IMG/VR virus record: IMGVR_UViG_3300045135_002615
Location: 186,001-250,000 of that record
Length of the DNA stretch: 64,000 nucleotides
Strand: one strand, 5' to 3'
The position numbers were made by a program, and so were the translations under genes. The stretch's first letter is position 1. Each line of letters begins with the position of its first letter. Shown here in pieces: positions 6,493 through 47,234 of this stretch. The notes beneath the pieces were generated by a model that saw only the letters and a list, made by a program, of their open reading frames with translations, ran no database searches and was not told where the DNA came from.

Positions 6493-6507
6493 GTCGGTAA
6501 AACTAAC

Positions 6508-32715: not shown

Positions 32716-32760
32716 AAAGCCCCCCCCCGATCTCCTTAGATGGAGGTCGGGGGGTTTTTC
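32716..32760 (+). terminator. Intrinsic terminator
   Basis: C-run-GATCTCC / GGAGGTC-G-run stem followed by a T tract. Confidence 0.8.
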
Positions 32761-32961
32761 GTTTGTATGTGGGGAGAACCTTAGTAGTTTCTATCAGTAA
32801 AAAACGCCCCCCCGATACAGCCATTGATAGAAGGAGCTGAATGACCCTTTAACATCATTAGAGTCACGGGCTACACGGTATGCCTCAAATATTTATAGTT
32901 TATCCATTACTGCTACTATAAGTAATTGTAGGTAAACTATTTCACAACAAAGGAGGACATC

Positions 32962-33216
32962 ATGTCTTTAGATAAAAGAAAACTAGAAGAAGTCTTTGGA
33001 GAAGCTGAGATGGCATTTTGGGATGCTGTCGCATCGTCTTTTCCTGAAATCAAAAGTGGAGATCTCTCTCCATCTGACTCTGCCAAACTTGAAAAAGCCA
33101 TGAAAGAGGCAATCCAATCTTGGTATGTGGGCAATCAGCCTGCGGGTGAATCAACCAGCCAGATTGTCCGTAATCTTGAGCGTAGGGTTGCCCGACTCGA
33201 AAAGTCATCAAGGTAA
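32962..33216 (+). CDS. Small protein with C-terminal coiled-coil tag
   Basis: AGGAGG RBS; IVRNLERRVARLEK. Confidence 0.75.
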   Translation: MSLDKRKLEEVFGEAEMAFWDAVASSFPEIKSGDLSPSDSAKLEKAMKEAIQSWYVGNQPAGESTSQIVRNLERRVARLEKSSR

Positions 33217-33301
33217 TCGGAAATACATTTGTTCTCTTTTGTGGTTTTTCGCCATCCACAGATGGTTGATAGAAACTACTAAGGAGAACCTTAGATCAAG
33301 C

Positions 33302-33348
33302 AAAAAAAAGCTCCTCCACTTCCCTTAGATGGAAGCGGAGGAGCTTTT
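33302..33348. terminator. Bidirectional terminator
   Basis: AAAAGCTCCTCC...GGAGGAGCTTTT. Confidence 0.8.
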
Positions 33349-33374
33349 AGCTCAAGGTTAAGAGTGTTGTTTTC

Positions 33375-33707
33375 TTAGCGGAGAGTGGTGTCGCGGATGA
33401 TTCGAGCCGTCAGCTCTGCATTCTCAGCCTCGTCAATAGCGATCTCCGCGAGGAGGAGGTCACTCTTGTCAATAGAGATGGTCTCGCAGTCACGAAGCTC
33501 AAGCTCATCCGCCTGAGCCTCGCTTGACTCGCTGAGGAGGATGATCTCCCTAGCGAGACGATCACTAGTGCAGATGGTGATCTCTTGTGTAGACTGCAAT
33601 GACTCAGTAATCTCAAGGCTGAGGGAGGTGAGCGAGCAGAGGAGGGCGGCGGTGGCGGTCAAAAGTAAGCGGAGAGCGATGTCGCTGATTAAGGAGATGA
33701 TGGTCAT
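33375..33707 (-). CDS. Small exported or membrane-anchored acidic protein
   Basis: Hydrophobic N-terminus; IC....LARE...LELxDCE shared with its neighbour; own leader and terminator. Confidence 0.75.
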   Translation of the reverse strand: MTIISLISDIALRLLLTATAALLCSLTSLSLEITESLQSTQEITICTSDRLAREIILLSESSEAQADELELRDCETISIDKSDLLLAEIAIDEAENAELTARIIRDTTLR

Positions 33708-33822
33708 AGTTGTTTCCCTTTACTTGTGGGTTGTTGTTGTTGTTACAATCATATATCAATGCCGATTGAGGGGGGTGTTTTCCACCCTAATTGGGTTTAA
33801 AATATCTTTACTGCTAGGTTAA

Positions 33823-33867
33823 TAAAAAAGCCCCTCACTTCTCAGATTAAGGAAGTGAGGGGCTTTT
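33823..33867 (-). terminator. Intrinsic terminator
   Basis: AAAAGCCCCTCACTT...AAGTGAGGGGCTTTT. Confidence 0.8.
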
Positions 33868-33895
33868 GGATCAGTAGAGAGGCCACTTAAGAAAA

Positions 33896-34177
33896 TCAGT
33901 AGAGGGTCTGAGAGTAGGCTCGGAGAAGTCCGAGCTTCTCCTCCGCCTCCAAAATGGCGAGCCAAGAATAAAATGCCTCATAACTGTCTTCCACTTCAAT
34001 GATCTCGCAATCAGTTAGCTCAAGGGCTTCCCTTGTGCTCTCGTCTGATCGCCCGCTCAGGCTTACTCGCTCCCTGGCGAGCTCGCCTGAGTAACAGATC
34101 TCGATGGTGGTGTCTTGGGCGGAGGCGACTGAGGAGAGGGCGGTGAGGGCGAGAAGTGTAGTTAGAATGGTACGCAT
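33896..34177 (-). CDS. Small secreted acidic protein, paralogue of 33375-33707
   Basis: Signal peptide ending ASA|Q; two conserved Cys. Confidence 0.78.
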   Translation of the reverse strand: MRTILTTLLALTALSSVASAQDTTIEICYSGELARERVSLSGRSDESTREALELTDCEIIEVEDSYEAFYSWLAILEAEEKLGLLRAYSQTLY

Positions 34178-34299
34178 TGTTGTTTCCCTTTTGTGTGTTG
34201 TTGTTGCTTACAGGTATCAATGCCATCAGGGGGGGGTGTTTTTTTGGTTATTTATATATATACATTTGCATTAACCACCCTCTATTGGAGCAAAAAAAT

Positions 34300-34815
34300 A
34301 TGAGACACTTAACAGCAAGTCAGAAGATCGCTCACCTTGAGCATCGCCTCGCTCGTCTTGAAAGAAGAGCTACGCATTGGACTGATGTCTACCATCCGAG
34401 TGAGATGGTAGACGGCTACGTTGATGATATGGGCTACGAGAAGTACCCACCCAGCTATAGCCAAGGACCGGTATGTGACTCTATAGCAAGAGAGATGAGT
34501 CGCCGCCTGAAAAGGAAGGGTTATAATATCCAACATATGCCTGATTGGGTTGGGTATAGGATTCACCTCCCTTTGAATGGGATCACTTATGAGATGATAA
34601 ACTCAGATACTGATCCAAGTCTACCTCTCTGTAAAGAGTTAGTTCTCCAGGTAATGAAGGACGCAGGTCTTAAGGGTCATGTGTACTACAGGAGAGGGTC
34701 TCACTACTACAGGAAAGAGCTTGCGGGGGGTCGCTGTCTCCTTAGTATTAGTTGCTCACAAGATGAGGGTCTGAGCTTTGATGTAGACAGGGTGATAACC
34801 CGACGTAGGAGATAA
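34300..34815 (+). CDS. Hypothetical protein with coiled-coil tag
   Basis: GGAG RBS; MRHLTASQKIAHLEHRLARLERRA. Confidence 0.8.
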   Translation: MRHLTASQKIAHLEHRLARLERRATHWTDVYHPSEMVDGYVDDMGYEKYPPSYSQGPVCDSIAREMSRRLKRKGYNIQHMPDWVGYRIHLPLNGITYEMINSDTDPSLPLCKELVLQVMKDAGLKGHVYYRRGSHYYRKELAGGRCLLSISCSQDEGLSFDVDRVITRRRR

Positions 34816-34868
34816 GGGGGTTATACTCCATTTATCACCACCACATCAGGCACCAACTAAAGGAGGAG

Positions 34869-35243
34869 ATGTCCATGAGACACTTAACAGCTAGTCAAAA
34901 AATCGCTCAACTTGAATCCCGTATCGCCCGTCTAGAGAAGCAAGCCTCTTTGAGAAGAGGTCTCGACAGGGAGGAGGAAACCGTCTTAGATGAAGTAATC
35001 CACCACTACAGACTCAGGCCACGAGACTATGAAGATGTCGAAATTAGTATTGAGGATCAGGTAGGGCGTGGGGAAGATAGGATCGTGCTCTATGAGGTGT
35101 CTCTTTTCAAAGAAGACGGGGATAGCTTTACTTGCTATGTCCTTTATGACGCTTACGAAGAATTGGTGGAAGGGTTTTACGATTACCAAGATGATTATGA
35201 AGCCCAAAGAGCCTTTGACTCACTAGTAGAGCGACACGCATAA
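34869..35243 (+). CDS. Acidic hypothetical protein with coiled-coil tag
   Basis: MRHLTASQKIAQLESRIARLEKQAS; motif at 34823-34835. Confidence 0.8.
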   Translation: MSMRHLTASQKIAQLESRIARLEKQASLRRGLDREEETVLDEVIHHYRLRPRDYEDVEISIEDQVGRGEDRIVLYEVSLFKEDGDSFTCYVLYDAYEELVEGFYDYQDDYEAQRAFDSLVERHA

Positions 35244-35420
35244 CCTAAAGGGTGAGACATACTCAACGAGTATGGGTATTTTTGATGGCGTTAACTCTCA
35301 GATATAGTTGCTGATAGCAACAGATACAGACACCCCTGATAGGGTTGGATGTAATAAAGACTCCGTAAGGGGTCTTTATCTATATAAGGGCTTTACACAC
35401 TTAACCTTTATGGAGACGAT

Positions 35421-36035
35421 ATGTCATTCACCTACTATGATGAGTACGCTGATTTTGAGCCTGCTCTTATCCCTGTTGATTTAGAGTTTTTCGCCACCGT
35501 ACAACGAGAGCTCACCTTGGACTTCCAAGTGTCCTCATTTTGCGACCTTTACAAGTCCGACCCCAATGATCAAAACCTGCCTTGCGTCTACCCTGCCCTC
35601 CGCCTGATTGGTGAGGATGTTGACTTTGAGAAGATCAAGCTCAACGTAGAGGGTGCTAACCTCGTGGCGACAGACTCCTATATGGAGGATGATTGTCGCG
35701 TGATGGTTTGGGTCTTTGCCCCGACCTCAACAGGCTATGCACAGATTCAGTATGGTGCAGCCTTAGAGGATAAGGCAAAGCTCACATGGTTCTCAACAGA
35801 CGACAACTCTTACTTGGTCTGCGACTTTGATGAGAACCCCGTAAGTGTCACGGATGCGAAGCTCGGTCTTTACCAAGAGATTTACACTCCTGAGAAGAAG
35901 GAGCTACGAGAGGACAACCGCAGGATTTTAGAGTTGCTGAAGAATACGGATAACGGTTTAGAGGTGTCCTCTTACCTTGAGTTGATTCAGCAAAATCTTG
36001 AGAAGATGAAAGAGTGTAACGGTTACACTTGCTGA
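35421..36035 (+). CDS. Acidic hypothetical protein
   Basis: GGAG RBS, 204 aa. Confidence 0.7.
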   Translation: MSFTYYDEYADFEPALIPVDLEFFATVQRELTLDFQVSSFCDLYKSDPNDQNLPCVYPALRLIGEDVDFEKIKLNVEGANLVATDSYMEDDCRVMVWVFAPTSTGYAQIQYGAALEDKAKLTWFSTDDNSYLVCDFDENPVSVTDAKLGLYQEIYTPEKKELREDNRRILELLKNTDNGLEVSSYLELIQQNLEKMKECNGYTC

Positions 36036-36418
36036 TCGGGTTCTGTACCCTCATCTTCAACAGAAGCCTCAGCTTCCTCAGAGGGAGTTGGGGCTTCTTC
36101 GTTTTCTGAGAACAGGGACGCCATCATCTCAGCCATCTTATCTTCGTCCATATCTTCCATTCCCTCGCCCCCAAAGAGACCCGCAAGGGGGTTATCTTGA
36201 CCTTGTAGCATCTCCTCGATGCCACCCTCTGTCTCGGCAGCCTTCATGAGCTTCTCCATATCAAGGTTTCCACCCATAAGGAGCTTCATCATCTCCATGA
36301 TGTCGTTCATGCCGAGTGGCTTCTCAAGCTCTTTACGCTCACGGGCTTTACGCTCCTTGCGGCGTTGCTTGATACGGATCTTCTTCTTGTGTGCGTTACG
36401 TTGTTTCTTGTTCATCAC
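36023..36418 (-). CDS. Hypothetical protein with basic N-terminus and Met/acid-rich C-terminus
   Basis: AAGGAGG RBS. Confidence 0.7.
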   Translation of the reverse strand: MMNKKQRNAHKKKIRIKQRRKERKARERKELEKPLGMNDIMEMMKLLMGGNLDMEKLMKAAETEGGIEEMLQGQDNPLAGLFGGEGMEDMDEDKMAEMMASLFSENEEAPTPSEEAEASVEDEGTEPDQQV

Positions 36419-36494
36419 ATACCTCCTTATCGGTGTCTTGTCTTATACCGATAGTATAAAGAGGTATATGGCAACACAGTACGGAGAGCGAACA

Positions 36495-37094
36495 ATGATA
36501 GAGATTAAGATAGGAGATTGCGTAGATCGCCTCAAAGACCTAGAGGACAACTCCGTTGACGCAATCATCTCAGACCCACCTTATGGTGTGAAGTATATGG
36601 AGAGTGGGTGGGACGATATAGGAGAAGGCTCGCAACAGAGAGAGTGGCACAGAGCTTGGTTGAAGGAAGCTCATAGGGTTCTTAAATGTGATGGTGTCCT
36701 CAAAGCGTTCTCTAGTGCTAAAACCCTGCATCATTTAACCTCTGCTATGGTCGAGGTAGGATTCGTAAACCTCTTAGTCGAGGCATGGGTTTACACAAGT
36801 GGTATGCCGACAGGAAACTACGATATGGCTAAAGGCATCGAGGCAACTATCCTGTTTGGAGACTCGAATAAATCAACATTCAAAAAACTTAAAGGGACTC
36901 GTAAAGAGGGCAAAACGGGGTATGCCAAACTTAGAGTAGAGCAAGGTACTAGAGCCACAGATTATGGTCTTTCATCTAGTGCATTTGACCTTGAGCCTCA
37001 AACTAAAGAGGGATCTCTTTACATGGGCTATGGTACTACCCTTAAGAAGTCATGGGAACCTATTTGTATCGGGGTTAAGAGATGTCACTCTTAA
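36495..37094 (+). CDS. Split methyltransferase, catalytic (DPPY) subunit copy A1
   Basis: SDPPY ... GYGTTLKKSWEPI; no FxGxG motif. Confidence 0.85.
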   Translation: MIEIKIGDCVDRLKDLEDNSVDAIISDPPYGVKYMESGWDDIGEGSQQREWHRAWLKEAHRVLKCDGVLKAFSSAKTLHHLTSAMVEVGFVNLLVEAWVYTSGMPTGNYDMAKGIEATILFGDSNKSTFKKLKGTRKEGKTGYAKLRVEQGTRATDYGLSSSAFDLEPQTKEGSLYMGYGTTLKKSWEPICIGVKRCHS

Positions 37095-37143
37095 CGATGA
37101 TGAAGGGGCTTCTCGGTTCTTTAAACAGTTCAAGAAAGAGTAA
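37093..37143 (+). pseudogene. Remnant 3' end of a middle (B) subunit
   Basis: Reads NDDEGASRFFKQFKKE*, matching the end of 37693-38301. Confidence 0.75.
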
Positions 37144-37146
37144 CTA

Positions 37147-37696
37147 ATGATAGAGATTAAGATAGGTGATTGTGTAGATCGCCTCAAAGACCTAGATGAC
37201 AACTCAGTTGATGCAATCATCTCTGACCCCCCTTATGGGCTCAAGTTTATGTCTAAAGGTTGGGATGACATAGGTGAGGGTAGTCAACAAAGGGAGTGGC
37301 ATAGGAAATGGTTAACCGAAGCTCATAGGGTTCTTAAACCTAATGGGGTACTCAAAGCCTTCTCAGGGTCGAGGACATTCCATCACCTGATAGGGATGAT
37401 GGAAGAGATAGGCTTCTCAGATTTATCCGTAGAGGCTTGGACATATGGTTCTGGCTTCCCCCAAATCACATAACGTGGCTCTTGGCATCGACAAGAAACG
37501 TGGTCACGGGAACAGGGGTCGGGCGATACCCACAGCGTCAAGGTATCAAGCCTCAGATAAAGAGGAGGAGAACAAGCTCACCTCAAACCCTGTGGAGGAG
37601 TACAGGGCTAAGACGGAAGCCTCCGCACCTTTTGAGGGATGGGGGACAGCTCTAAAACCCGCATGGGAGCCCATTTGCATAGGAGTTAAAAAATGA
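37147..37696 (+). CDS. Split methyltransferase, catalytic subunit copy A2; frameshift at a C5 run (37458-37462)
   Basis: SDPPY; YGSGFP|KSHN motif broken by one extra C; ends WGTALKPAWEPI. Confidence 0.8.
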
Positions 37697-38301
37697 TTAT
37701 CACGTTACTGAGAAAGCCCTTAGAGGGGAGCGTAGCAGATAACGCCCTTAAACATGGTTGTGGGGCTATCAACATAGATGGCACTAGGGTGGGTACAGAA
37801 GCTCGCTCTTACAAAGGTGCAGGTAAAACCGATAAGGTTTACTCTGAGAGTGGGGCAGGTATGTTAGACGGCAGAGGGAAAGATATGGAGTTCTCTGTAG
37901 AGGGTAGGTGGCCTGCTAACTTCATTCTTACTCACCTTGATGGCTGTGAAATAAAAGGCACTAAGAAAGTTAAATCGGGTACTGCTTATCAGGACAAGAG
38001 GGCGGGGATCAATCATGTATACAGTGCCAATTTGGGTCCAAATGTAAAGGGAAAAGCAGGGTATGCAGATGAGGAGGGGAAAGAGGAAGTGGCGGATTGG
38101 GCTTGTGTAGAGGGTTGCCCTGTCATAGAGCTTGACCAACAAAGTGGACATCTTAAAAGTACGACAAGAAAACCCACAGGAAATCCGATATACCCTACCT
38201 CAAACACCTCAGTCACATGGAACCCAAACAATGTGATGGACACATCACAACGAGGGTTCAATGATGAGGGCGGGGCTTCTCGGTTCTTCAAGCAGTTCTA
38301 A
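37693..38301 (+). CDS. Split methyltransferase, middle (variable, putative target-recognition) subunit B
   Basis: RKPL, GAINID, GRWPAN, GGASRFF. Confidence 0.8.
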   Translation: MIITLLRKPLEGSVADNALKHGCGAINIDGTRVGTEARSYKGAGKTDKVYSESGAGMLDGRGKDMEFSVEGRWPANFILTHLDGCEIKGTKKVKSGTAYQDKRAGINHVYSANLGPNVKGKAGYADEEGKEEVADWACVEGCPVIELDQQSGHLKSTTRKPTGNPIYPTSNTSVTWNPNNVMDTSQRGFNDEGGASRFFKQF

Positions 38302-38335
38302 TATCGCGGTATGCGATTACACTAAGGAGAGATAA

Positions 38336-40252
38336 ATGAAAGACATGATTGATTACTTTAAAACGATGATTACCCCACCTGTAGAGGATGCTCTTGTGCT
38401 CGTAGCTAAGCCTTCTGAGATTGCTTATGATGAGTATATTCAGGAGGTCTTAGAGGAGGGTGAACTCGCACCTACTAGGGAGCCTATGGTTCACGGAGTC
38501 ATCCTCTTGGAAGAGCCTACAGATGAAGAATCTAAGCAGCTACTTTCCATCTTGAAGCCAGGTGGACATGTTGTACTGATCCCTGTAGACCCGATTGGAT
38601 ACAAGGGGGTGGTCGCCCTTGAGGACACAGGGTTTGAGGTACGAGATGCAATCTTTGTAGCAGATGATCCATATACCTTTTACTACACATCTAAGGCGAG
38701 TAGAACTGAGAGAGAAGCAGGGCTTAAGTCTAAAGATGGTAGTAGAGCCAACACCCACCCTTGCCTCCACCCCAGAGCAGATGTGCTCACAGATAGAGGG
38801 TATCGTCCTATCGAAGACATTAAGATTGGCGATAATGTCTATACTTCATCGGGGACGTTCCATAAGGTAGAGTATGTCTCCCGTCATCCTTACACTAGCC
38901 CATGCCTATATGAGATCTCAGTGCAAGGAACTAACTACACAACGCTCAGTTCTGATAATCATCCTTTCTTAATCTACCGCCCCGTTCGTAAGTCTAATGC
39001 TATTGTAGGAGGCTCTGTGGGATGGGTACAAGGCTGTGATATTCGTAAGGGGGACTATACGATGACCCCTGTCTTTAAAGAGCCTGTCGAAGACTCTCCT
39101 CTATCTCAAGATTCTTATGAGGGTTGGTTTGTGTTTGGGCTATGGGTTGCTGAGGGGGTTCTCCATACTTCGGGAGGGGGGTCCAACAGATACCCTTCTT
39201 TCACAATCAACTCAGAAAAGATCGAGCTTATTGAAACGATCAAACGTGTGTATTCTTCTGTGAATGTCTCAGTCTACGAAAAGCAAGGGAACGCAGTTCA
39301 AGTGGTGGCTTTTTGTCGAGACAAGGGGGAGGAGTACTTCCGTCTAGCAGGTAAAGGGGCGGGCACTAAGTCTCTCGACCCAAGCATATGGAAACTGAGC
39401 CTTTCAGAGAGACAAGCAATCTTAGATGGTTATATGGCAGGAGATGGGTGTGTAATTCGCTCATATACTCAAGCCAAAACGGTATCGCCTGATTTGGCTA
39501 GTCAGATGAGATTACTAGCCCACTCTGTAGGTCTTAAAGCAAACCTGTTTCGTTATGAGGGGAGTGTCGGAAGGGGTATTGGAGATCGTAAGTTTAAAAG
39601 CACCCTTCCTGAACACCATCTTAGATTTTACTCTAAGAACTTGAAACAAGCGAGAGGGGGCGGTTCAAGGAAGCCGAGCCGACCCACTATTATAAACCAT
39701 GAGGGAGTTGATTTTGTACTCTCCTATATTAAGTCTGTGGTGGAAGTTCCTTATGTAGGAGATGTCGTGAACCTCTCTGTTGAAGGCGACCCTACCTTTC
39801 AGACTGCTGTAGGTATGAGTCACAATACAGTGAAGCCCATAGGGATTATGGAGTGGTGTGCTAGGGACCTTGAGCCTAACTCTAAAGTCGCAGAGCCCTT
39901 CATGGGTTCAGGTACTACGGGTATCGCCATGAGCCGTCTTGGGCACGACTTCGTGGGTATAGAGCTGAACAAAGAATATGCGGAACTCAGTGAATCTTGT
40001 ATAAGGCATTGGATGCCCATTGGCACAGAGATCAAATCTGAGGCAGATGTGGGCAAAGCAGAATCTGCTCAAGGAGGGCAGGTATCTATTTTGACATCTT
40101 CGGATAGGAGACAACAATATGACACGTTATTGTGTTGCAACAGGAGAGAGTGCCAAGAGAGCCTTCTTGAAGGCAAAGGAGGAGAACCCTTTCCTAGACC
40201 CTTACAAGGCTTACTTCATCGAGAACTCGCATTGTGTATACAGCTTCGCTGA
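38336..40252 (+). CDS. Split methyltransferase, SAM-binding subunit C with intein; true stop probably 40107
   Basis: KAS..ER, HP|TVKP, PFMGSGTT; probable 1-nt slip at T4 (40089-40092). Confidence 0.85.
   Translation: MKDMIDYFKTMITPPVEDALVLVAKPSEIAYDEYIQEVLEEGELAPTREPMVHGVILLEEPTDEESKQLLSILKPGGHVVLIPVDPIGYKGVVALEDTGFEVRDAIFVADDPYTFYYTSKASRTEREAGLKSKDGSRANTHPCLHPRADVLTDRGYRPIEDIKIGDNVYTSSGTFHKVEYVSRHPYTSPCLYEISVQGTNYTTLSSDNHPFLIYRPVRKSNAIVGGSVGWVQGCDIRKGDYTMTPVFKEPVEDSPLSQDSYEGWFVFGLWVAEGVLHTSGGGSNRYPSFTINSEKIELIETIKRVYSSVNVSVYEKQGNAVQVVAFCRDKGEEYFRLAGKGAGTKSLDPSIWKLSLSERQAILDGYMAGDGCVIRSYTQAKTVSPDLASQMRLLAHSVGLKANLFRYEGSVGRGIGDRKFKSTLPEHHLRFYSKNLKQARGGGSRKPSRPTIINHEGVDFVLSYIKSVVEVPYVGDVVNLSVEGDPTFQTAVGMSHNTVKPIGIMEWCARDLEPNSKVAEPFMGSGTTGIAMSRLGHDFVGIELNKEYAELSESCIRHWMPIGTEIKSEADVGKAESAQGGQVSILTSSDRRQQYDTLLCCNRRECQESLLEGKGGEPFPRPLQGLLHRELALCIQLR
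38762..39826 (+). mobile_element. Intein with LAGLIDADG homing endonuclease (355 aa)
   Basis: HP|CLHP...SHN|TVKP; NHPF; FGLWVAEG and LDGYMAGDG. Confidence 0.93.
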
Positions 40253-40523
40253 GGCGTTGTTTAGCAAAGACAAGTTCTTAGGGCACACCCGTAACAAGTC
40301 CTGTAGGGCGTTAGTTCTAGAGGGTGGTGTCGGGTACTTCTTCTTCATCGACCCACCTGAGAGGACTCTTGAAGATATAGAGTCTTGTGTGGACCACTTG
40401 AATGAGAAGGATACCCCGATTACGGATCGTATCCTCAAGGGTCTAGAAGATGAGTTAGTCAAGTGTGGTATGACCCAAGAGGATGCTCTCATCAAGATTG
40501 ACGAGTTGCTCCATGATCTTTGA
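40119..40523 (+). CDS. Hypothetical protein
   Basis: AGGAG RBS. Confidence 0.65.
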   Translation: MTRYCVATGESAKRAFLKAKEENPFLDPYKAYFIENSHCVYSFAEALFSKDKFLGHTRNKSCRALVLEGGVGYFFFIDPPERTLEDIESCVDHLNEKDTPITDRILKGLEDELVKCGMTQEDALIKIDELLHDL

Positions 40524-41277
40524 GAACTCAAGGACGAGGCTACATCTTGGTGACTGCACTCAAGATAACTTTTTCACAGAGCCTTTCATCGACCTGACAG
40601 TCACATCACCTCCGTACAATCTCAGCATAGAGTATGAAGACCATGATGATGGTGGTTCTTATGGGGACTACTTGGACTTCTGCACTCAGTGGATGACCAA
40701 CTTGTACAGATGGTCTAAGCCTAACGCTAGGTTCTGTTTGAACATCCCTTTGGACATCCAGCTGGATGGTTCTCGCTTCATTAGTGGTGATTTAACACGA
40801 GTGGCACTTGAGTGTGGTTGGCATTACAGGACTTCTATCATATGGCATAAAAACCAAGTGACTTCGAGGACTGCATGGGGTAGTTGGATGTCTCCAAGTG
40901 CTCCAATGGTGATTGCTCCTGTTGAGATGATCCTTGTGTTCTACAGAGATGATTGGAAGAAGCCCGATTTAAACGGATTGGGTACTGATCTCAGCAAGGA
41001 AGAGTTCATTAAATGGACAAGTGGGATGTGGTCTATGGCTACGGAGTCTGCGAAGCGTATAGGACACCCTGTACCCTACCCCATAGAGCTACCCCATCGT
41101 TGTATCAAAATGTTCAGTTGGATCGGGGATACTGTATTTGACCCATTTGCGGGGTCTGGGACGACCCTCATCGCCGCCCACAATTCTAAGCGAGACGCAG
41201 TAGGCGTTGAGCTTTCCAAAACTTATTTTGATCTTGCTGTGGAGCGTTTCTCTAAAGAGTGCTTCACGTTGCTTTAA
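40513..41277 (+). CDS. DNA amino-methyltransferase, beta class
   Basis: TSPPY, TAWGSWMSPSAP, HPVPYP, DPFAGSGTT. Confidence 0.92.
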   Translation: MIFENSRTRLHLGDCTQDNFFTEPFIDLTVTSPPYNLSIEYEDHDDGGSYGDYLDFCTQWMTNLYRWSKPNARFCLNIPLDIQLDGSRFISGDLTRVALECGWHYRTSIIWHKNQVTSRTAWGSWMSPSAPMVIAPVEMILVFYRDDWKKPDLNGLGTDLSKEEFIKWTSGMWSMATESAKRIGHPVPYPIELPHRCIKMFSWIGDTVFDPFAGSGTTLIAAHNSKRDAVGVELSKTYFDLAVERFSKECFTLL

Positions 41278-41324
41278 TACCTTTTTTATGAGTCTCTCCT
41301 GTTAAAGTTGAGGAGGTTTCTGAC

Positions 41325-43325
41325 ATGGACTTTTTAGTACACCCATATAGGTTTAGACGGGTTAGGTTGGCATCGGCTCACTTGAGCCATGCTCATTTGG
41401 TGAAGATAGCCAAGTACCAGTACAAGGTCGCTGAGAAGATGGACCTTGAGACCAAGTTTGAGGAGACAGACCCTTACACGGGAGAAGTCCCGACAAGCAA
41501 GAAATTCTTTAACCGTCTGACATGGCTCAACAACATTGCACAAATGGGAGCTTATGCGTTCATCTCGGATCTTACAGGTCCTATCAGCAGGTTGCTCAAT
41601 AGCTTAGTGAACATGTTATTTAGGTCACCTGTACTCAACTACTTCCTCGCGGGTCACTTTCAAGATGTCAAGGACAGGGCGGTTATCCTTGCTATCAAAA
41701 GTTTTAAGAGGGGTATGGCGTATCGAGATAATGCTGAAAAGTATGATCGCATGGAGTTTGATTACTTCAAAGAGCAAGGGTTTGATGCAAAGGTTGTCAG
41801 TAATCCTGTTCCATACACTCCCTCTCTATACAAGCGAACTAGAGACATCATTAAAACATATAGTCCGCCTAAAGAGAAGGTTGTCCCATTCTTCAGGATG
41901 GAGGTTAAGATTAAACCCAAGCAGAAGTCTTATAAGGACTTACCTCCACTTCCTGGTTTCGACAGGGGTAAGCTCCCGCCGACTTTCTCTGCTAAGAAGG
42001 GCGTTATGTATGAGTTCTTTTTATTGGGGTATTGGAGAGCCCATGAAAAGAGATCAAGGCAATACGAAGAGGAACTTAAGAAGAATGGTTTAGATGGTGC
42101 GAGGATTCAATTTGAAGACTCTAAGATGTCTGAGGCGGATCGTAATCTGGTTGTTGATCGCGTTAATCTTGAGATTGATTCAAAGCTCACATTACACTTC
42201 TTCAAGGATACTTTATTTGGTCTTGTGACCGACCCGTTGTATCTTCGTTCTATTGCTGTGAAAACGTGGAAGGCTGTCTATGGGGGTCTTCCTAGGAAGA
42301 CACTATGGCAGAAGATAAAAGACGGGGTGAAAGGGGCTCTTACTGCTTTCCTCTCTTATGGCATCACTGCTATTGTTAAATGGAAGATCGGCGGTGCATT
42401 TGTAGGCTTTTACGCGGCGACCTCTTTATTCGGGTATTCAGGTAAGGCGTTGGCGTTTTGGCTACTAGGGGGTATTCCTTTCACCTATCTTGCAACTAAA
42501 GCAGCGTACCTCTTTAGGGAGTTCGCATCTAAGCATATACTCAAGGATTATGATGCTCTTTTAACTCTCCTTGCAGAAGAGATCACAGATGCTGATGTGG
42601 ATGTGAGGCAAGGACTTGAGCGTATCCGTGCTCTTAACAGGAACAAGTTGGTTGCAGAGAGAGACCGAAAAAGAGATCAAGCTCGCTTCAAGGCTATCAT
42701 AGAAAAGAAGGAGGAGGGGCTTAAGAAGAAACCTGTAAATCTTCGTGATTTCACCTTGCGTACCATGACTACAGAGGAGAAGCGTGAATATAATGGGTTG
42801 GTGGGTACACAAAAAGAAGAGTACCTACAAGCACTCATGGACAAAGTACATCGTGAGCTTTTAAACCAAAAAGAGTTTGAGGAGTCCTCTTTAGAGGAGG
42901 ACTATATAGAATACAGGGAAAGGGTCCTCAATCAAAAGAGGGAGGTGGGGATGTATGTTGAGGAAGAGATTGAAAAAGCTCGTGGTAAGTACTATGGTAA
43001 GTTGCAGAGACAGTTGAATAAGCAGTTGCTAAAACTAGAGCAGCTTGAGAACAGCCCTAAAAAGTTGACCTCAGAGGTAGCTAAAAGAAGACGTGAGAAA
43101 CGCATAGCTCAGCTCAAGGCAGATATTGAAGAGACTCGTAACGAGCTTCTTAGGTTCGAGAGAGAGCAGACTCTTCCCCCAAGTGTTGTTGGGAAAATAT
43201 GGGACAAAGTAAAGAGCTCGGTAGGTGAGGTTCTCCCTGATGCCCTAAAACCCACTGAGCTAGAGGATCTCATACACAAAGGCGACACTGTCTATGAGTT
43301 TAAAGACACAGACAGGAACTCTTGA
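41325..43325 (+). CDS. Putative virion protein with central hydrophobic helices and C-terminal coiled coil
   Basis: RLAS/KIA/KVA leader; motif at 41277-41289; paralogue of 43884. Confidence 0.75.
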   Translation: MDFLVHPYRFRRVRLASAHLSHAHLVKIAKYQYKVAEKMDLETKFEETDPYTGEVPTSKKFFNRLTWLNNIAQMGAYAFISDLTGPISRLLNSLVNMLFRSPVLNYFLAGHFQDVKDRAVILAIKSFKRGMAYRDNAEKYDRMEFDYFKEQGFDAKVVSNPVPYTPSLYKRTRDIIKTYSPPKEKVVPFFRMEVKIKPKQKSYKDLPPLPGFDRGKLPPTFSAKKGVMYEFFLLGYWRAHEKRSRQYEEELKKNGLDGARIQFEDSKMSEADRNLVVDRVNLEIDSKLTLHFFKDTLFGLVTDPLYLRSIAVKTWKAVYGGLPRKTLWQKIKDGVKGALTAFLSYGITAIVKWKIGGAFVGFYAATSLFGYSGKALAFWLLGGIPFTYLATKAAYLFREFASKHILKDYDALLTLLAEEITDADVDVRQGLERIRALNRNKLVAERDRKRDQARFKAIIEKKEEGLKKKPVNLRDFTLRTMTTEEKREYNGLVGTQKEEYLQALMDKVHRELLNQKEFEESSLEEDYIEYRERVLNQKREVGMYVEEEIEKARGKYYGKLQRQLNKQLLKLEQLENSPKKLTSEVAKRRREKRIAQLKADIEETRNELLRFEREQTLPPSVVGKIWDKVKSSVGEVLPDALKPTELEDLIHKGDTVYEFKDTDRNS

Positions 43326-43813
43326 ATCTTCTCTTTAGAGACAGATTTATTATTCTTGATCAGTTCAAGCACCTGCCCTCTAAACACAAGGAGAGGTGAG
43401 AAGGTGTCTTCAAGCACGGATGCCCGGAGCCCGTGCTTTTTTATTAGCTCAGTGGCAATCTGCACCGCCATCCTCGCTTCAAGTGTCTTTAACATCTCTG
43501 TGACACTGGTTGTCACAGAGAAAAGACCATCCCCCCATACGATTTTCGCGTCTTGCCCATATACGACTTCTAGCGTCTCAGGGTTGAGTTCTCCTTCGAG
43601 TAAAAAGTTTTGCTCCTTGAACAAGACCCAAGATTCGACCTTGAAGTCATCATATATCTTGGACTCGACATAGTCCACTCTAGGGATACGAGATAAGCTC
43701 TTTGACAGGAGACCTTCTAGGTCAAGCCCTATCGCTTGAAGGACTCTTGCCTTAAGCCCCCCGCAAACTAGTGAGGGTGTGCCATTCTTTTTTGTGATGT
43801 ATTTAGCTTTCAT
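43292..43813 (-). CDS. Hypothetical protein, paralogue of 44998-45642
   Basis: GGAGG RBS before MKAKYI; shared VL[FY]K...LL.G, EA..A, HG..VLE..F.P. Confidence 0.7.
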   Translation of the reverse strand: MKAKYITKKNGTPSLVCGGLKARVLQAIGLDLEGLLSKSLSRIPRVDYVESKIYDDFKVESWVLFKEQNFLLEGELNPETLEVVYGQDAKIVWGDGLFSVTTSVTEMLKTLEARMAVQIATELIKKHGLRASVLEDTFSPLLVFRGQVLELIKNNKSVSKEKIQEFLSVSLNS

Positions 43814-43883
43814 GTGACCTCCATATTTTTTAGTTCTCTTATACACTGAATCTTGTTAATGGGGTCTAACAAGGAGTATTAAC

Positions 43884-44993
43884 ATGAACTTTCTACTACC
43901 ACACTCTGAGTATGTTAAGAGAAGGTATGCCTCAAAGCATATGCCAACTAGACAGATGTCCTTAATCGCTGTAGCTCAACTTAAGGGTCTAGACCGTCAA
44001 GCATCTATTATAGATGACCTGAAACAGTTTAATCTAGGTGCTTGGTGGGATAAAAAGTACGAAGAACTCTCAGAGAAGAAAAAGAGATGGCTCGAAAACG
44101 TATCGTTTGAAGGCATTGAGTTCATAGAGACAATCAAGAAGCCCTTTGTGACGACTTTGATTAAGACGATATCCTCTTTTATGACGGGACCTGCGTTGAA
44201 CTGGGTTTGGAAGGGAGTTTATGAGGCAGTCGCAACAAGATTGTTCCCCATTTGTCAAGATAGCTTTAGGGCAGGGGCCGTCTATAGAATAGAGATGGGG
44301 ACTACTATAAGGGTGAACGCATCTGAGTTAAGATCTCAAAAAATAGCCTACGACTATTGGAAGATGGGTTGGGACGACGCAAATAAAGTCCTATCCAAAG
44401 GTCACCCTATGAGAGCTTCTCAATATGATAAACTCTCAAAGAGACAAGTGCGAGATATTGAGTCAAGGCTCATCAGGGAGATCAAGGAACTCTTCCTAGT
44501 ACACTTCGTTAACAACATAAAGTACAACTTCGTTGATAACCCTCTTGGTGTTTGGAAGATGGTTAAGCACAACTGGCTCAAGGAGAAAGCTAAAGGGAGG
44601 GGTTTCTTTTCAAAAGTGATCGGGGTGCTACCAGGTATCGTTTTTGGTCTTTTTAAACTTGCAGCATGGTTTATCTTCTCTAAGGTGCTCGCCGCAACAG
44701 GAGGTGTACTAGGCGTTATTCTCTTGATAGGTAAGACCGTCACAAGTTTCTTGATCCCAACTATCCTACACTATATTACGGACGCTTGGTCTAAGTTCAG
44801 GTATGGTGAAGCTGTCTCTGAAGATATTAAGAAAGAGAAGTTTGACTCCGAGAGTAAAATGAAGCTTCAAAAGAAGATCGAGGAGAAGGCACTAGAAGAA
44901 AGAGGTCAGTTGTTTGACAAGGTGAAATCAAAAGCAGTTGGCTTTTGGAGTGGTGAAGAAGTTCACCCTAATGCCCCACTTAACGAAGATTAA
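43884..44993 (+). CDS. Putative virion protein with hydrophobic helices, paralogue of 41325
   Basis: M[ND]FL leader, RYAS, RQAS, SF..G, G[YW]W/YW..GW, hydrophobic block. Confidence 0.75.
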   Translation: MNFLLPHSEYVKRRYASKHMPTRQMSLIAVAQLKGLDRQASIIDDLKQFNLGAWWDKKYEELSEKKKRWLENVSFEGIEFIETIKKPFVTTLIKTISSFMTGPALNWVWKGVYEAVATRLFPICQDSFRAGAVYRIEMGTTIRVNASELRSQKIAYDYWKMGWDDANKVLSKGHPMRASQYDKLSKRQVRDIESRLIREIKELFLVHFVNNIKYNFVDNPLGVWKMVKHNWLKEKAKGRGFFSKVIGVLPGIVFGLFKLAAWFIFSKVLAATGGVLGVILLIGKTVTSFLIPTILHYITDAWSKFRYGEAVSEDIKKEKFDSESKMKLQKKIEEKALEERGQLFDKVKSKAVGFWSGEEVHPNAPLNED

Positions 44994-44997
44994 AACT

Positions 44998-45642
44998 TTA
45001 GGAAGCTAAGAGCTCTTTTACAATTTGGTCGCAGGTAAGAGATCCTCTCTTCATGTCTACAAGGCTAATCTCAACCATGCGACCGTCCAAGAAAACTCTC
45101 AATCTAGGTCGGAATGGATGCTCAAGTACCATCTCACCACCTACTGCCACACCATGTCTTTCTAAGCGGCTCTTTATTTTATTAAACTGACTACTTGCTC
45201 TCTCCATAGCTATTTGAGCTTCAAAGTGTAATGTAAACAGTTTTTGTGTTCTACTTAAAGTCAAAGACCCTGAATCTAATGTGTGGGTGAGTACCATGCC
45301 CTTCACTCCGAAATCGACATGGACATCACCTCCTTCATTGGGTTGGCACACCTTACCTGCCAAAAGTATCGTGTGTCCCTTGTACAGCACTTTAGCGGAC
45401 AGGTGAAAGTTCTTGTCGTTCACTTTCACCTTTGCTGAATACACATCTCTTAGTGATTCCAATGTGGCTTCCACGTCACTTGCTATATCATCCCCTTTAA
45501 GAAAAAGGGGTATGTTTACAATCCCTCCCCTGTAGACTTTAAGTTCACCTTCAACATCTTTAATGTATAAGGCTGCCTTCTTCTCAAGGTGGCTGATCCT
45601 TTTTTCTAAATCATAGATTCGTTCCACAGCTGTCTTTCTCAT
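44998..45642 (-). CDS. Hypothetical protein with coiled-coil tag
   Basis: MRKTAVERIYDLEKRISHLEKKAA; AGGAG RBS; motif variant at 45680-45692. Confidence 0.78.
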   Translation of the reverse strand: MRKTAVERIYDLEKRISHLEKKAALYIKDVEGELKVYRGGIVNIPLFLKGDDIASDVEATLESLRDVYSAKVKVNDKNFHLSAKVLYKGHTILLAGKVCQPNEGGDVHVDFGVKGMVLTHTLDSGSLTLSRTQKLFTLHFEAQIAMERASSQFNKIKSRLERHGVAVGGEMVLEHPFRPRLRVFLDGRMVEISLVDMKRGSLTCDQIVKELLAS

Positions 45643-45754
45643 AGTTAACTCCTGTCTCCTATTCACTACAAGAGACCCTATAGATAATCTATCGTAAATT
45701 GGTCACCCCACCTCCGCATTGATATAAGTCCTTAAGATTACGAAAGGATATACA

Positions 45755-46372
45755 ATGCTTACACCCCAAGAGATTCTCTTTATCATCCTGTCCCTACTTG
45801 GGGCAGACAACGCTAAGGTCGATGATACAGCTAAAACCCGCATGGCTGAGCTGAGCCAAGCAATCTCTGACCATCAATCTGAGACAGTATCAGCACACAC
45901 GCTAATCGCGGTTAGCTTCGTTGAAGACCGCTTCTCCTATGACGGAGATCAAGGAGCAAACCACAAGGGTGCTTGTGGTCCTTATCAGCAGATCCCGAAG
46001 TGGGCTGCTGAGGAGGTCACTTGCTCCGACCTTGCAGACCCTCAAACTGCTACCCGTGTAGCAGTCAAGAGCATCAAATGGTTCTACAAGACCTTTGGTG
46101 AGAAGCTCGACACCCTCTGCCACTACAACGGTGGCATGGAGTGTGTTGGGGGTGCGGTTGACTACGCGGAGGATGTCAAGAAGACATACCGCAAGAGCAA
46201 GAGCCTTCTTAAGAGGTATCGCTCAAAGACACCCTCCCTCAAGACGACTATCAAGAAGGTTAAGACACGCAAAAAGAAGCGTGTCCACACCCCACCTCCA
46301 CCTACACTAGACTACGTTGGTCCCCCTCCTACCATCTATGGGGACTATGTTGGACCCCCTGACTCTATCTAA
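45755..46372 (+). CDS. Lytic transglycosylase-like exported protein
   Basis: A...VE.RF, GACGPYQ, HYNGG; basic and Pro-rich tail. Confidence 0.6.
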   Translation: MLTPQEILFIILSLLGADNAKVDDTAKTRMAELSQAISDHQSETVSAHTLIAVSFVEDRFSYDGDQGANHKGACGPYQQIPKWAAEEVTCSDLADPQTATRVAVKSIKWFYKTFGEKLDTLCHYNGGMECVGGAVDYAEDVKKTYRKSKSLLKRYRSKTPSLKTTIKKVKTRKKKRVHTPPPPTLDYVGPPPTIYGDYVGPPDSI

Positions 46373-46382
46373 GGAGCCCCCC

Positions 46383-46541
46383 ATGAAGTTCAAAATCTGC
46401 TTAGTCCTCATTCTCATCATCAAAGCGGTACTCCTCATTACCACTCTCTCACAGCCAGTGGTTTTCTCTGCTGACCTCTCAAGTGAGAAGTTCCCAGAGC
46501 CTTGCGTTGAGTTCATCCCTCAAGACCGCAAGTGTCCATAG
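46383..46541 (+). CDS. Small membrane or secreted peptide
   Basis: AAGGAG RBS; hydrophobic N-terminus. Confidence 0.5.
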   Translation: MKFKICLVLILIIKAVLLITTLSQPVVFSADLSSEKFPEPCVEFIPQDRKCP

Positions 46542-46589
46542 AAAAAAAAACTCCCCCCCCCCCTCCACTCATTAATATAAAGTAGTAAG

Positions 46590-46780
46590 AGGTAGTGGGT
46601 GAGGTTCCCTGAACCACCTTCAACTAGATGTAACATTCCTAGTTGAAGGTGGAGGGTAGAGCCCCCCCACGAGTTGACCCACCCAACTAAGTGGTCAGCA
46701 TAGAGCGTCAAGCTCACAACTTGAAACATCATAGGAGTTAATACTCCACACTAAAGGGCTCCCAATATGGGAGCTTTTAG
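46590..46780 (+). ncRNA. Candidate structured ncRNA
   Basis: Perfect 14-bp stem 46614-27/46639-52 with outer pairings, further hairpins, promoter-like motif upstream, terminator at 46751-46780. Confidence 0.5.
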
Positions 46781-46919
46781 TTTATTTAGGGTAGGGCATC
46801 CACAATGGATAAACTCATCTACCTATATGCGTCAGCGATCATTATTTCTGCTCTCGCTACTCACTACCTGCTAATCTCCCTCTTAATAAAAATCTTCTAC
46901 TGAAATCTTAAGGAAAAAA

Positions 46920-47210: not shown

Positions 47211-47234
47211 CAGAGGTGTGCTCCTTAGTATAAT
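47207..47234 (+). promoter_or_regulatory. Sigma70-type promoter for the tRNA region
   Basis: TTGACA-N16-TATAAT. Confidence 0.8.

What the first reader, a model, noticed from the sequence alone, without database searches (positions are those of the whole stretch)
32799..46580. Second promoter-like motif: AAAAC, C-run, CATTGATA
Copies lie at 32799-32829(+), 33753-33781(-), 34215-34245(-), 45701-45724(+, weaker) and 46542-46577(+, CATTAATA). The targets are exported proteins and the candidate ncRNA. It resembles neither the sigma70 promoters nor the late motif, suggesting a third expression class. The variable C runs could tune spacing.
Basis: partly seen in the sequence, partly recalled or inferred. 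Interest (0 to 1): 0.6.

Follow-up and report, generated by a model that had tools for sequence, protein, structure and literature searches.

The report
C-tract promoter class of a jumbo phage
The motif is real and is most likely the promoter of a separate, non-structural gene class in an uncultured 297-kb marine phage, probably read with the help of a phage-encoded factor; no transcript data exist to prove it.

Summary
The pattern C5-N4-12-CATTRATA hits 4 loci in the window against 0.02 expected. The window is part of a 296,642-bp seawater phage record. Genome-wide there are about 15 such sites. Each has an A-rich stretch, a run of 4-11 C (core about -32 to -26), a 7-12-nt gap, then CATTnATATAAG(TA). 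All are intergenic and point at a gene, mostly 30-68 nt before its start codon.

They differ from the few canonical TTGACA/TATAAT promoters (tRNA-Glu, phage sigma gene). They also differ from a compact late motif, TnATAGT-N3-TTTAT (24 sites, ahead of the protease and capsid genes).

A relative with about 53% protein identity has 20 sites of C5-8-N7-11-TGATAA, all intergenic. Some lie before orthologous genes (SNF2 helicase, AAA+ pair). Other relatives carry their own stereotyped C-tract motifs.

Targets are not only exported proteins. They include pentapeptide-repeat proteins, a helicase, an ATPase and a transglycosylase.

Window sites 1-3 lie in a 1.5-kb cassette that close relatives lack.

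Best reading: a third, pre-late promoter class needing a phage factor, most likely the phage's ECF-like sigma. There is no RNA evidence. C-run "tuning" is unsupported.

The parts
32799..32833 (+). Site 1: A6, C7 (32807-32813), 11-nt gap, TGATAGAAG. It lies 129 nt before the 84-aa gene, the longest leader of the set. A second TATAAGTA box without a C run sits at about 32917-32924.
33750..33781 (-). Site 2: AAAAC-A-C6, 11-nt gap, TGATATATG. The box starts 51 nt before the ATG of the 110-aa gene.
34211..34245 (-). Site 3: A7-C-A-C8, 9-nt gap, TGATACCTG. The box starts 42 nt before the ATG of the 93-aa signal-peptide gene.
45701..45728 (+). Site 4 (weaker upstream half: CACCCCACCTCC): CATTGATATAAG, 35 nt before the ATG of the SLT transglycosylase gene.
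46542..46581 (+). Site 5: A9-CT-C11, 9-nt gap, TAATATAAA. It starts right after the stop codon of the 52-aa ORF. No ORF follows.
32962..33216 (+). 84-aa gene downstream of site 1. No family match.
33375..33707 (-). 110-aa gene downstream of site 2, with a hydrophobic N-terminus. It is a paralogue of the 93-aa gene (44% identity over 64 aa, E 2e-8).
33896..34177 (-). 93-aa gene downstream of site 3. The N-terminus looks like a cleavable signal peptide (read by eye).
45755..46541 (+). Two genes downstream of site 4: a 205-aa SLT-domain lytic transglycosylase (PF01464, 27.6 bits) with a hydrophobic N-terminus, then a 52-aa hydrophobic ORF (46383-46541).
46588..46785 (+). About 190 nt without an ORF downstream of site 5. 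It is strongly structured (MFE -82.7 kcal/mol, z = -6.8) and ends in a hairpin plus T-run (46754-46785). No credible Rfam family (the one sub-threshold hit, bxd_5, is a chance match), and no copy in the relatives fetched.
32717..32760 (+). Terminator of the major head gene, directly upstream of site 1. Its C9 run (32720-32728) holds the left edge of the cassette.
33306..33348 (.). Two-way terminator hairpin between the 84-aa and 110-aa genes.
33826..33870 (.). A-run, hairpin, T-run between the 93-aa and 110-aa genes. It insulates unit 3 from unit 2. Read by eye; the terminator scan did not list it.
32725..34261 (.). Strain-variable cassette holding sites 1-3 and their three small genes. Contigs of close relatives in two other studies (about 97% identical in the flanks) join 32724 to 34262 or 34294, with 69 or 98 other letters between.
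   Evidence: tables 5 and 8
55403..56029 (-). Candidate reader of the motif (inference only): a 208-aa phage sigma. Pfam gives a weak Sigma70_r2 match. The predicted fold matches ECF sigma chains over nearly their whole length. A C-terminal helix-turn-helix is conserved in four relatives. The gene sits behind a canonical TTGACA-16-TATAGT promoter at about 56126-56153 (-).

Best explanation
The five sites belong to a set of about 15 promoters of a separate, non-structural (pre-late or accessory) gene class in a 297-kb uncultured marine jumbo phage that has no RNA polymerase of its own.

Anatomy, numbered as if TATAAG were -12 to -7:
- an A-rich stretch at about -44 to -36, often ending in AAC;
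- a C tract whose core is -32 to -26 (-29 and -28 are invariant);
- an unconserved gap;
- then C-A-T-T-n-A-T-A-T-A-A-G-T-A from -18 to -5, and a TAA near +1.

Proposed mechanism. Host RNA polymerase core is brought to these sites by a phage-encoded specificity factor. The most likely factor is the phage's own two-domain, ECF-like sigma (window 55403-56029). That gene is itself made early from a canonical host-type promoter. Its sigma4 part would read the AAC/C-tract box, and its sigma2 part the TnATATAAG box.

Most units are short and several are bracketed by terminators. That makes the promoter a portable signal for accessory genes as well as for conserved helicase and ATPase genes.

Shown: the motif, its statistics, position, orientation, difference from the two other promoter types, and recurrence at orthologous genes in relatives.
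Inferred: that RNA starts there, the timing, and which protein reads it.
For: 1. Specificity. The five-site window pattern is far above chance. Genome-wide, all 15 sites lie between genes. 14 of them point at a gene, 13 with the box 30-68 nt (mostly 35-51) before the ATG and one at 137 nt; the fifteenth (site 5) points at a structured RNA with no ORF.
2. Distinct class. The late motif TnATAGT-N3-TTTAT has 24 sites, all intergenic, including the head protease and major head operons. Canonical TTGACA-N16/17-TATAAT promoters are few and serve tRNA-Glu (12 of 12 matches) and the sigma gene (11 of 12). The C-tract sites have no -35 hexamer, T never occupies -7, and only 7 of 15 have TG at -15/-14.
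3. Conservation.
   - Relative G002 (median protein identity 53%, GC 38%) has 20 sites of C5-8-N7-11-[TCA]GATAA. All 20 are intergenic and 19 lie 33-53 nt before an ATG.
   - Such sites stand before the SNF2 orthologue and on both sides of the divergent AAA+ pair, as in this genome. G003 has C7-N13-TATGTATAAG before its AAA+ orthologue.
   - G001 and G005 instead carry 52 and 37 exact copies of TAACCCCTTAT, again before the AAA+ gene, its partner and SNF2.
   - G003 has 40 copies of TTGGGATAA.
   - Such stereotyped, lineage-specific consensus sequences are typical of phage-encoded specificity factors. Meanwhile the sigma gene keeps a canonical host-type promoter in G000, G002, G003 and more loosely G001.
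4. Machinery. No multisubunit RNA polymerase gene was found; the T7-type search was uninformative, because its control matched nothing. One sigma is present whose predicted fold aligns over 165-186 columns with ECF sigmas (sigma2 plus sigma4; probability 0.97-1.0). It is only 48-50% identical between lineages whose motifs differ.
Against: - There is no RNA evidence at all. No run on record as RNA holds the phage.
- The -10-like box is close to a host sigma70 -10. In G002 the same TTTCATATAAGT box is joined to a canonical TTGACC at 16-nt spacing. Host sigma70 may therefore read the -10, which favours the activator rival.
- The phage sigma and the late motif are both conserved across G000-G003. 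The sigma could be the late sigma instead.
- The C tract sits right against the TA-rich box in G001 and G003 but 10 nt away in G000 and G002, so the tracts may not be equivalent.
- AAC precedes the C run in only about half of the sites, and its distance to the -10 box varies from 17 to 21 nt.
- Sites 2/3, and genome sites 9822/12278, are partly duplicates. The number of independent sites is therefore below 15.
Confidence: 0.45

Rival explanations
1. A middle-type promoter read by host sigma70 plus a phage activator. Sigma70 region 2 reads TATAAG (with TGn in half of the sites). The C tract, centred near -29, is the box of a phage DNA-binding protein that replaces the -35 contact, as MotA does with AsiA in T4. 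Candidate binders are the conserved sigma4-only protein (genome 127841-128413) and the GcrA/Myb-like four-HTH protein (genome 88745-89350).
For: - The geometry matches T4 middle promoters: a box at about -35 to -26, 12 +/- 1 bp from a good -10, and TGn in about half (PMC2988021). Here the C tract spans about -32 to -26, a mean of about 13 nt (range 10-15) from the hexamer, with TG in 7 of 15 sites.
- The same -10 is used with a canonical -35 in G002.
- A protein that passes Pfam's Sigma70_r4 cut-off but has no sigma2 is 72% and 61% identical in G002 and G003. That is more conserved than the genome average, as is the C tract itself.
Against: - No MotA (PF09158) or AsiA (PF09010) homologue was found in six family genomes.
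- T at -7, a key sigma70 contact, is never present.
- Nothing links either candidate protein to C tracts.
Confidence: 0.25
2. Early promoters read by host sigma70 holoenzyme alone. They would be -35-independent sites driven by the -10 box, TGn and an UP-like A tract. The C tract would then be structural, for example a stiff G/C tract next to a bent A tract, or the operator of a shut-off repressor.
For: - The A-rich stretch at -44 to -36 resembles a proximal UP subsite (my own knowledge of the consensus).
- The -10 matches 5 of 6 consensus positions, and TG is present in 7 of 15 sites.
- The targets look like host-takeover or accessory genes: pentapeptide repeats and small secreted proteins.
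Against: - The C tract is the most conserved part (2.0 bits at -29 and -28). It recurs in G002 at orthologous genes.
- Half of the sites have neither a -35 nor TG, and none has T at -7.
- Relatives show 20-52 near-identical sites per genome, which is unlike host-type promoters.
Confidence: 0.17
3. Contingency promoters. The C runs are slippage-prone tracts whose length changes switch or tune expression, as in the Bordetella fim and Neisseria opc/porA promoters.
For: - The homopolymer lies inside the promoter.
- Site 5 has 11 C, a length at which slippage is frequent (own knowledge; homopolymer phase variation is reviewed in PMC1891110).
- Run lengths differ between sites, from 4 to 11.
Against: - Most runs are 6-8 nt, short for frequent slippage.
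- The run's 3' edge keeps a fixed distance to the -10 box, and length does not clearly trade off with the gap.
- No length variants could be observed. Only contigs were available, and two pattern scans found no close relatives.
Confidence: 0.05
4. Not promoters at all. They would be a dispersed repeat or leftovers of C/G-rich terminator stems that happen to lie near AT-rich boxes.
For: - C/G runs also form terminator stems in this genome (32720-32754; genome 24538-24573).
- Some sites are duplicates of each other.
Against: - Orientation and distance to start codons are uniform.
- There is no flank similarity beyond the motif for most sites.
- All 20 G002 sites are intergenic and gene-oriented.
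Confidence: 0.05

Closest known systems
Bacteriophage T4 middle promoters (MotA box plus sigma70 -10; sigma appropriation by AsiA and MotA)
   Same: A phage-specific box centred near -30 replaces the -35 hexamer. There is a good -10 about 12-13 bp downstream, and TGn in about half of the promoters. It is a separate temporal class in a phage that uses the host polymerase (PMC2988021; PMC6755090).
   Different: The box here is a C homopolymer, not (a/t)(a/t)(a/t)TGCTTtA. No MotA or AsiA homologue is present. T at -7 is absent. Timing is unknown.
Promoters of ECF (group 4) sigma factors and of phage-encoded sigmas (e.g. SPO1 gp28; own knowledge)
   Same: Strictly two-part, stereotyped promoters with an A-rich/AAC upstream element and a fixed spacer. 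This phage encodes a sigma2-sigma4 protein whose fold matches ECF sigmas, and that gene is made from a host-type promoter.
   Different: The downstream box is TA-rich (TnATATAAG), not the CGT-type -10 of most ECF sigmas. AAC is present in only about half of the sites. The pairing of this sigma with this motif is untested.
-35-less extended -10 phage promoters (Thermus phage P23-45 middle/late class, gp39 switch)
   Same: Phage promoters that dispense with the -35 hexamer and lean on the -10 region (PMC3950348).
   Different: Here a second conserved upstream element, the C tract, is present, and TG is not obligatory.
Phase-variable promoters with homopolymer tracts (Bordetella fim2/fim3, Neisseria opc/porA)
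   Same: A poly-C or poly-G tract sits inside the promoter between an upstream element and the -10 (PMC1891110; details from own knowledge).
   Different: Those tracts are longer (about 10-15) and vary in length within populations. Here most are 6-8, the tract is the conserved element itself, and variation could not be tested.
Phage morons (promoter-gene-terminator units inserted between conserved genes; own knowledge)
   Same: Sites 1-3 drive three small genes, each with its own promoter. Two of the units are followed by a terminator. The block lies between the major head gene and the next conserved gene, and close relatives lack it.
   Different: The same promoter type also serves conserved core genes (SNF2, AAA+).

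Membership tests
Canonical sigma70 (-35/-10) promoter | TTGACA-like hexamer 16-18 bp upstream of the -10 | tested here: not met
   Positions -35 to -30 are A/C and then C-run. True TTGACA promoters exist elsewhere in the genome.
Canonical sigma70 (-35/-10) promoter | TATAAT-like hexamer with A at -11 and T at -7 | tested here: inconclusive
   T-12 and A-11 are near-invariant, and TATAA is present in most sites. Position -7 is G in 9, A in 5 and C in 1 of 15 sites, and never T.
Extended -10 promoter | TG at -15/-14 | tested here: inconclusive
   T-15 is invariant, but -14 is G in only 7 of 15 sites (C in 4, T in 3, A in 1).
T4-type middle promoter (sigma appropriation) | Non-sigma box centred near -30, 12 +/- 1 bp from the -10 | tested here: met
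   The C tract spans about -32 to -26. The gap to T-15 is 9.9 +/- 1.3 nt, which puts it about 13 nt from the hexamer. This is geometry only.
T4-type middle promoter (sigma appropriation) | MotA and AsiA homologues encoded by the phage | tested here: not met
   PF09158 and PF09010 give no match at E <= 1 in G000-G005.
Phage/ECF sigma-dependent promoter | The phage encodes a sigma with both sigma2 and sigma4 domains | tested here: met
   Sigma70_r2 match of 19 bits, phrog_1740, a conserved C-terminal HTH, and fold matches to ECF sigmas over nearly full length. The model's mean pLDDT is 73.
Phage/ECF sigma-dependent promoter | That sigma directs transcription from the motif | not testable with these tools
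   This needs in vitro transcription or co-expression reporters.
Phase-variable homopolymer promoter | Tract length differs between cells or strains and changes expression | not testable with these tools
   Only assembled contigs were served. No close relative was found by pattern scans.
Moron (self-contained accessory unit) | Own promoter and terminator, inserted between conserved genes, present or absent among close relatives | tested here: met
   This holds for sites 1-3. Terminators lie at 33306-33348 and 33826-33870 (read by eye). The block 32725-34261 is absent from contigs about 97% identical in the flanks, in two other studies. None of the 80 capsid-neighbour loci holds these genes.
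Promoter (any class) | Transcripts start just downstream | not testable with these tools
   No RNA run holds the phage.

The most novel reading that the evidence does not exclude
In a family of marine jumbo phages whose capsid proteins are 90-97% identical, each lineage has rewired its pre-late genes to its own stereotyped C-tract promoter. G000 uses C6-8-N10-TGATATAAG. G002 uses C5-8-N10-TTGATAAG. G001 and G005 have 52 and 37 exact copies of TAACCCCTTAT. G003 uses CCCC-TAATAAG-N14-TTGGGATAA. The common C tract would be read by a conserved sigma4-only protein that stands in for region 4 of the host sigma. That would be a new, MotA/AsiA-independent form of sigma appropriation, with the homopolymer giving built-in tunability.
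Probability: 0.15. Interest if true: 0.75.

Novelty: new variant of a known kind. Interest (0 to 1): 0.5.

Why it matters
Promoter classes are known for only a handful of cultured phages. Here a three-tier programme can be read from sequence alone in an abundant, uncultured marine jumbo-phage family (573 capsid relatives in IMG/VR). The tiers are host-type promoters for the sigma and tRNA genes, C-tract promoters for helicase, ATPase and accessory genes, and a shared late motif for virion genes.

The class gives a way to predict the timing of hundreds of unknown genes and to spot accessory cassettes. It also offers a concrete pair to test, an ECF-like phage sigma or a sigma4-only protein against a poly-C box. 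That test would extend what is known about how phages redirect host RNA polymerase. If the sites turn out to be ordinary host-read promoters, the finding reduces to an annotation aid.

Tried and rejected
- RNA evidence: the run search listed only nine DNA contig sets and no RNA.
- Read-level C-run variation: impossible, because the runs are served as contigs.
- IMG/VR scan for AAAC-N-C6-N6-12-CATTGATA: four single, unrelated hits.
- JGI metagenome scan for GGCATTGATA-N9-AACAACAACA: six unrelated hits.
- Phage-record megablast of 15 kb: no match.
- Footprinting of sites 1-3 in 80 capsid-neighbour loci: the region downstream of the head gene is not conserved at DNA or protein level in any of them.
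- Related loci for the SLT gene and for the AAA+ gene as a single sequence: nothing. With an AAA+ alignment only the already known genomes came back.
- First pattern for relatives (C5-N5-14-TNATATAA): it wrongly suggested the class was unique to this genome. The G002 class has TGATAA, so that pattern missed it.
- "TTGATA is a -35 hexamer": rejected. No -10 follows at 16-18 nt, and the box lies too close to the start codons.
- "Genome-end location implies immediate-early": rejected. The G002 terminal repeat is only 127 bp, so its coordinate origin is not a physical end.
- Enrichment of lineage-specific genes among targets: 7 of 14 against 37% genome-wide, p = 0.22, not significant.
- Phage RNA polymerase: the multisubunit family search gave no match. 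The T7-type search is uninformative because nothing matched in its controls.

Full report
WHAT THE WINDOW IS
The window is bases 186001-250000 of a 296,642-bp IMG/VR virus record, estimated 95% complete. One seawater metagenome holds it almost fully, and others hold parts. The major head protein (window 31796-32674, phrog_2522) has 573 relatives in IMG/VR, the best 80 at 90-97% identity. Among named phages the nearest are an uncultured 485-kb phage (88%), a Tunturiibacter phage (47%) and Bacillus phage G (38%). No multisubunit RNA polymerase gene was found. The T7-type search was uninformative because its control matched nothing anywhere. One sigma-like gene lies in the window at 55403-56029 on the minus strand.

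THE OBSERVATION
CATTGATA occurs 7 times against 1.76 expected. C5-N4-12-CATTRATA hits four loci against 0.02 expected. In the whole genome the motif is broader and more frequent, with about 15 sites.

Aligned on the TA-rich box, and numbered as if TATAAG were -12 to -7, the sites show:
- an A-rich stretch at -44 to -36;
- C at -32 to -26, with -29 and -28 invariant;
- no conservation from -25 to -19;
- then C-18, A-17, T-16, T-15, n-14, A-13, T-12, A-11, T-10, A-9, A-8, G/A-7, T-6, A-5;
- and a TAA near +1.

Of 96 runs of C>=6 in the genome, 13 have T-N-ATA 14-20 nt after the run start, against 1-6 at eight control offsets. Every site is intergenic. 14 of them point at a gene, 13 with the box 30-68 nt before the start codon; site 1 is the exception at 137 nt. 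Site 5 points at an RNA with no ORF. Two apparent "inside gene" flags came from spurious ORFs of my crude gene caller.

THREE PROMOTER TYPES IN ONE GENOME
- Late motif. A compact TnATAGT-N3-TTTAT has 24 sites, all intergenic and mostly 46-57 nt before an ATG. No other conserved position appears within 40 nt upstream or about 45 nt downstream. It precedes the operons with the head maturation protease and the major head protein.
- Canonical sigma70 type. TTGACA-N16/17-TATAAT promoters are few. The best are a 12-of-12 match before tRNA-Glu (47207-47234) and an 11-of-12 match before the sigma gene.
- C-tract sites. They have no -35 hexamer, never have T at -7, and have TG at -15/-14 in only 7 of 15 sites.

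The three types are thus distinct in sequence and in the genes they precede.

TARGETS
In the window the targets are an 84-aa protein, two paralogous small proteins with hydrophobic or signal-peptide N-termini (44% identity), an SLT transglycosylase followed by a 52-aa hydrophobic ORF, and a stretch without an ORF. That stretch is about 190 nt, folds strongly (z = -6.8), ends in a terminator, and matches no Rfam family.

Elsewhere the targets are three pentapeptide-repeat proteins, an SNF2 helicase, an AAA+ ATPase with its divergent 562-aa neighbour, and several unknowns. "Exported proteins" therefore holds for the window only.

Six of the leaders contain (CAA)n-like A/C-rich stretches.

RELATIVES
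My first pattern, which required TNATATAA, suggested the class was private to this genome. That was an artefact of the pattern.

- G002 (312 kb, GC 38%, median protein identity 53%) has 20 sites of C5-8-N7-11-[TCA]GATAA. All 20 are intergenic and 19 lie 33-53 nt before an ATG. Their consensus is A-rich, CCCCC, N10, TTTGATAA. One of them stands before the SNF2 orthologue (48% identity). Two stand back to back between the orthologues of the AAA+ pair, exactly as in this genome.
- G003 has A7-GACACCCA-C7-N13-TATGTATAAG before its AAA+ orthologue. It also has 40 copies of TTGGGATAA, 13 of them with CCCC..TAATA 12-20 nt upstream.
- G001 and G005 carry 52 and 37 exact copies of TAACCCCTTAT (controls 0). 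These stand about 45-60 nt before the AAA+ gene, its partner and SNF2.

The late motif, by contrast, is shared by G000-G003 (20, 39, 12 and 10 hits against 0-1 in controls). The sigma gene keeps a canonical host-type promoter in G000, G002, G003 and, more loosely, G001.

So a C-tract-containing, non-late promoter class is a family trait that serves conserved genes. Its sequence, however, is lineage-specific and very stereotyped.

THE CASSETTE
Contigs from two other studies are about 97% identical to the window on both sides. They join 32724 to 34262 or 34294, with 69 or 98 other letters between. The block they lack holds sites 1-3, their three genes and two terminators. A third study has a partial copy that covers site 2. 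In none of the 80 capsid-neighbour loci is anything from 32962 to 40252 found next to the head gene. Sites 1-3 are therefore promoters of a strain-variable accessory block.

WHO READS IT
This part is inference.

Candidate 1, the phage sigma. Its predicted structure (mean pLDDT 73) matches ECF sigma chains over 165-186 columns with probability 0.97-1.0. The alignment of five orthologues shows a conserved C-terminal helix-turn-helix. It is therefore a sigma2-sigma4 protein, of the kind that reads strict two-part promoters. It is made from a host-type promoter, and it is only 48-50% identical between lineages whose C-tract motifs differ. These points fit a cascade of host sigma70, then phage sigma, then the C-tract class.

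Against that pairing:
- the TATAAG box is close to a host -10;
- in G002 the same box is coupled to TTGACC at 16 nt;
- the sigma is co-conserved with the late motif.

Candidate 2, an activator. Host sigma70 would read the -10 and a phage protein would read the C box. This has the geometry of T4 middle promoters (PMC2988021). No MotA or AsiA homologue exists in these genomes. Two conserved candidates do exist: a sigma4-only protein (PF04545, 25.0 bits against a cut-off of 24.1; 72% and 61% identical in G002 and G003) and a GcrA/Myb-like four-HTH protein.

Candidate 3, host holoenzyme alone. This is less likely, because the C tract is the best-conserved element and half of the sites lack both a -35 and TG.

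C-RUN LENGTH
Run length is 6.7 +/- 1.8 nt. The gap from the run's 3' end to T-15 is 9.9 +/- 1.3 nt, and the distance from the run's start to T-15 is 16.5 +/- 1.7 nt. Length against gap gives r = -0.43, p = 0.11. The 3' edge and centre of the run are the most constant, so extra C's mostly extend upstream. Nothing shows that length is used for tuning, and no read-level data were available.

VERDICT
The promoter reading is well supported by position, statistics and comparative data, but no transcript has been seen. "Third class" is the best reading. The reader protein is open, and I favour the phage sigma. This is a new variant of a known kind, namely class-specific phage promoters.

Noticed in passing
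window 31054-31066, 27357-27369, 4823-4835, 53194-53206 and about 20 more genome-wide: Compact late-type motif TnATAGT-N3-TTTAT. It has 24 sites, all intergenic and mostly 46-57 nt before an ATG, and precedes the head protease and major head operons. It is shared by relatives G000-G003. Many of its leaders hold a hairpin that includes the ribosome-binding site.
   Followed up: partly
window 47207-47234 (+) and about 56126-56153 (-): Perfect or near-perfect canonical sigma70 promoters: TTGACA-16-TATAAT before tRNA-Glu and TTGACA-16-TATAGT before the phage sigma gene. The sigma gene keeps a host-type promoter in three relatives.
   Followed up: partly
window 55403-56029 (-): A 208-aa phage sigma with an ECF-like two-domain fold. 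It is 37-50% identical in four related genomes.
   Followed up: partly
window 32725-34261: A 1.5-kb block of three small genes that is absent from contigs about 97% identical in the flanks, in two other metagenome studies. Its left edge lies inside the C9 run of the head-gene terminator.
   Followed up: partly
window 46588-46785 (+): A strongly structured stretch of about 190 nt between site 5 and a terminator (z = -6.8). It has no ORF, no Rfam family and no copy in the relatives fetched.
   Followed up: partly
leaders of window sites 2 and 3 (33715-33745, 34180-34210) and genome 4054-4080, 9831-9870, 12287-12320, 18200-18230: A/C-rich (CAA)n-like leaders between the box and a weak AAGGGA/AAGGA ribosome site. 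They may be unstructured translation-enhancing leaders.
   Followed up: no
genome 127841-128413 (+), locus L023:1378-1950: A 190-aa protein with one clear and one weaker sigma-region-4-like HTH and no sigma2 domain. It is 72% and 61% identical in G002 and G003, above the genome average.
   Followed up: partly
genome 88745-89350 (-), locus L025:1480-2085: A 201-aa protein made of four GcrA/Myb-like HTH repeats. The GcrA-type domain may hint at an alphaproteobacterial host.
   Followed up: no
genome 4082-4885, 9873-10496, 18232-18888 (locus L009): Three pentapeptide-repeat proteins, possible DNA mimics, each behind a C-tract promoter.
   Followed up: no
relatives G001, G005 and G003 (for example L146, L147, L016:2926-2942): G001 has 52 and G005 has 37 exact copies of the 11-mer TAACCCCTTAT. 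G003 has 40 copies of TTGGGATAA. These are lineage-specific stereotyped motifs, often in divergent pairs.
   Followed up: partly
window 38336-40252 (+): A 638-aa protein that combines a glycyl-radical/anaerobic-RNR-like region (residues 141-388) with a DNA methyltransferase-like C-terminus (474-558).
   Followed up: no
window 62997-72416 (+): A single 3,139-aa ORF behind a late-like motif. A 566-aa neighbour (61230-62930) has tape-measure-like matches.
   Followed up: no
window 48386-49768 (-), 54846-55427 (-), 6434-9031 (+): A GroEL-like chaperonin, a thymidine kinase and a ribonucleotide reductase large subunit. This is a typical auxiliary set for a jumbo phage.
   Followed up: no
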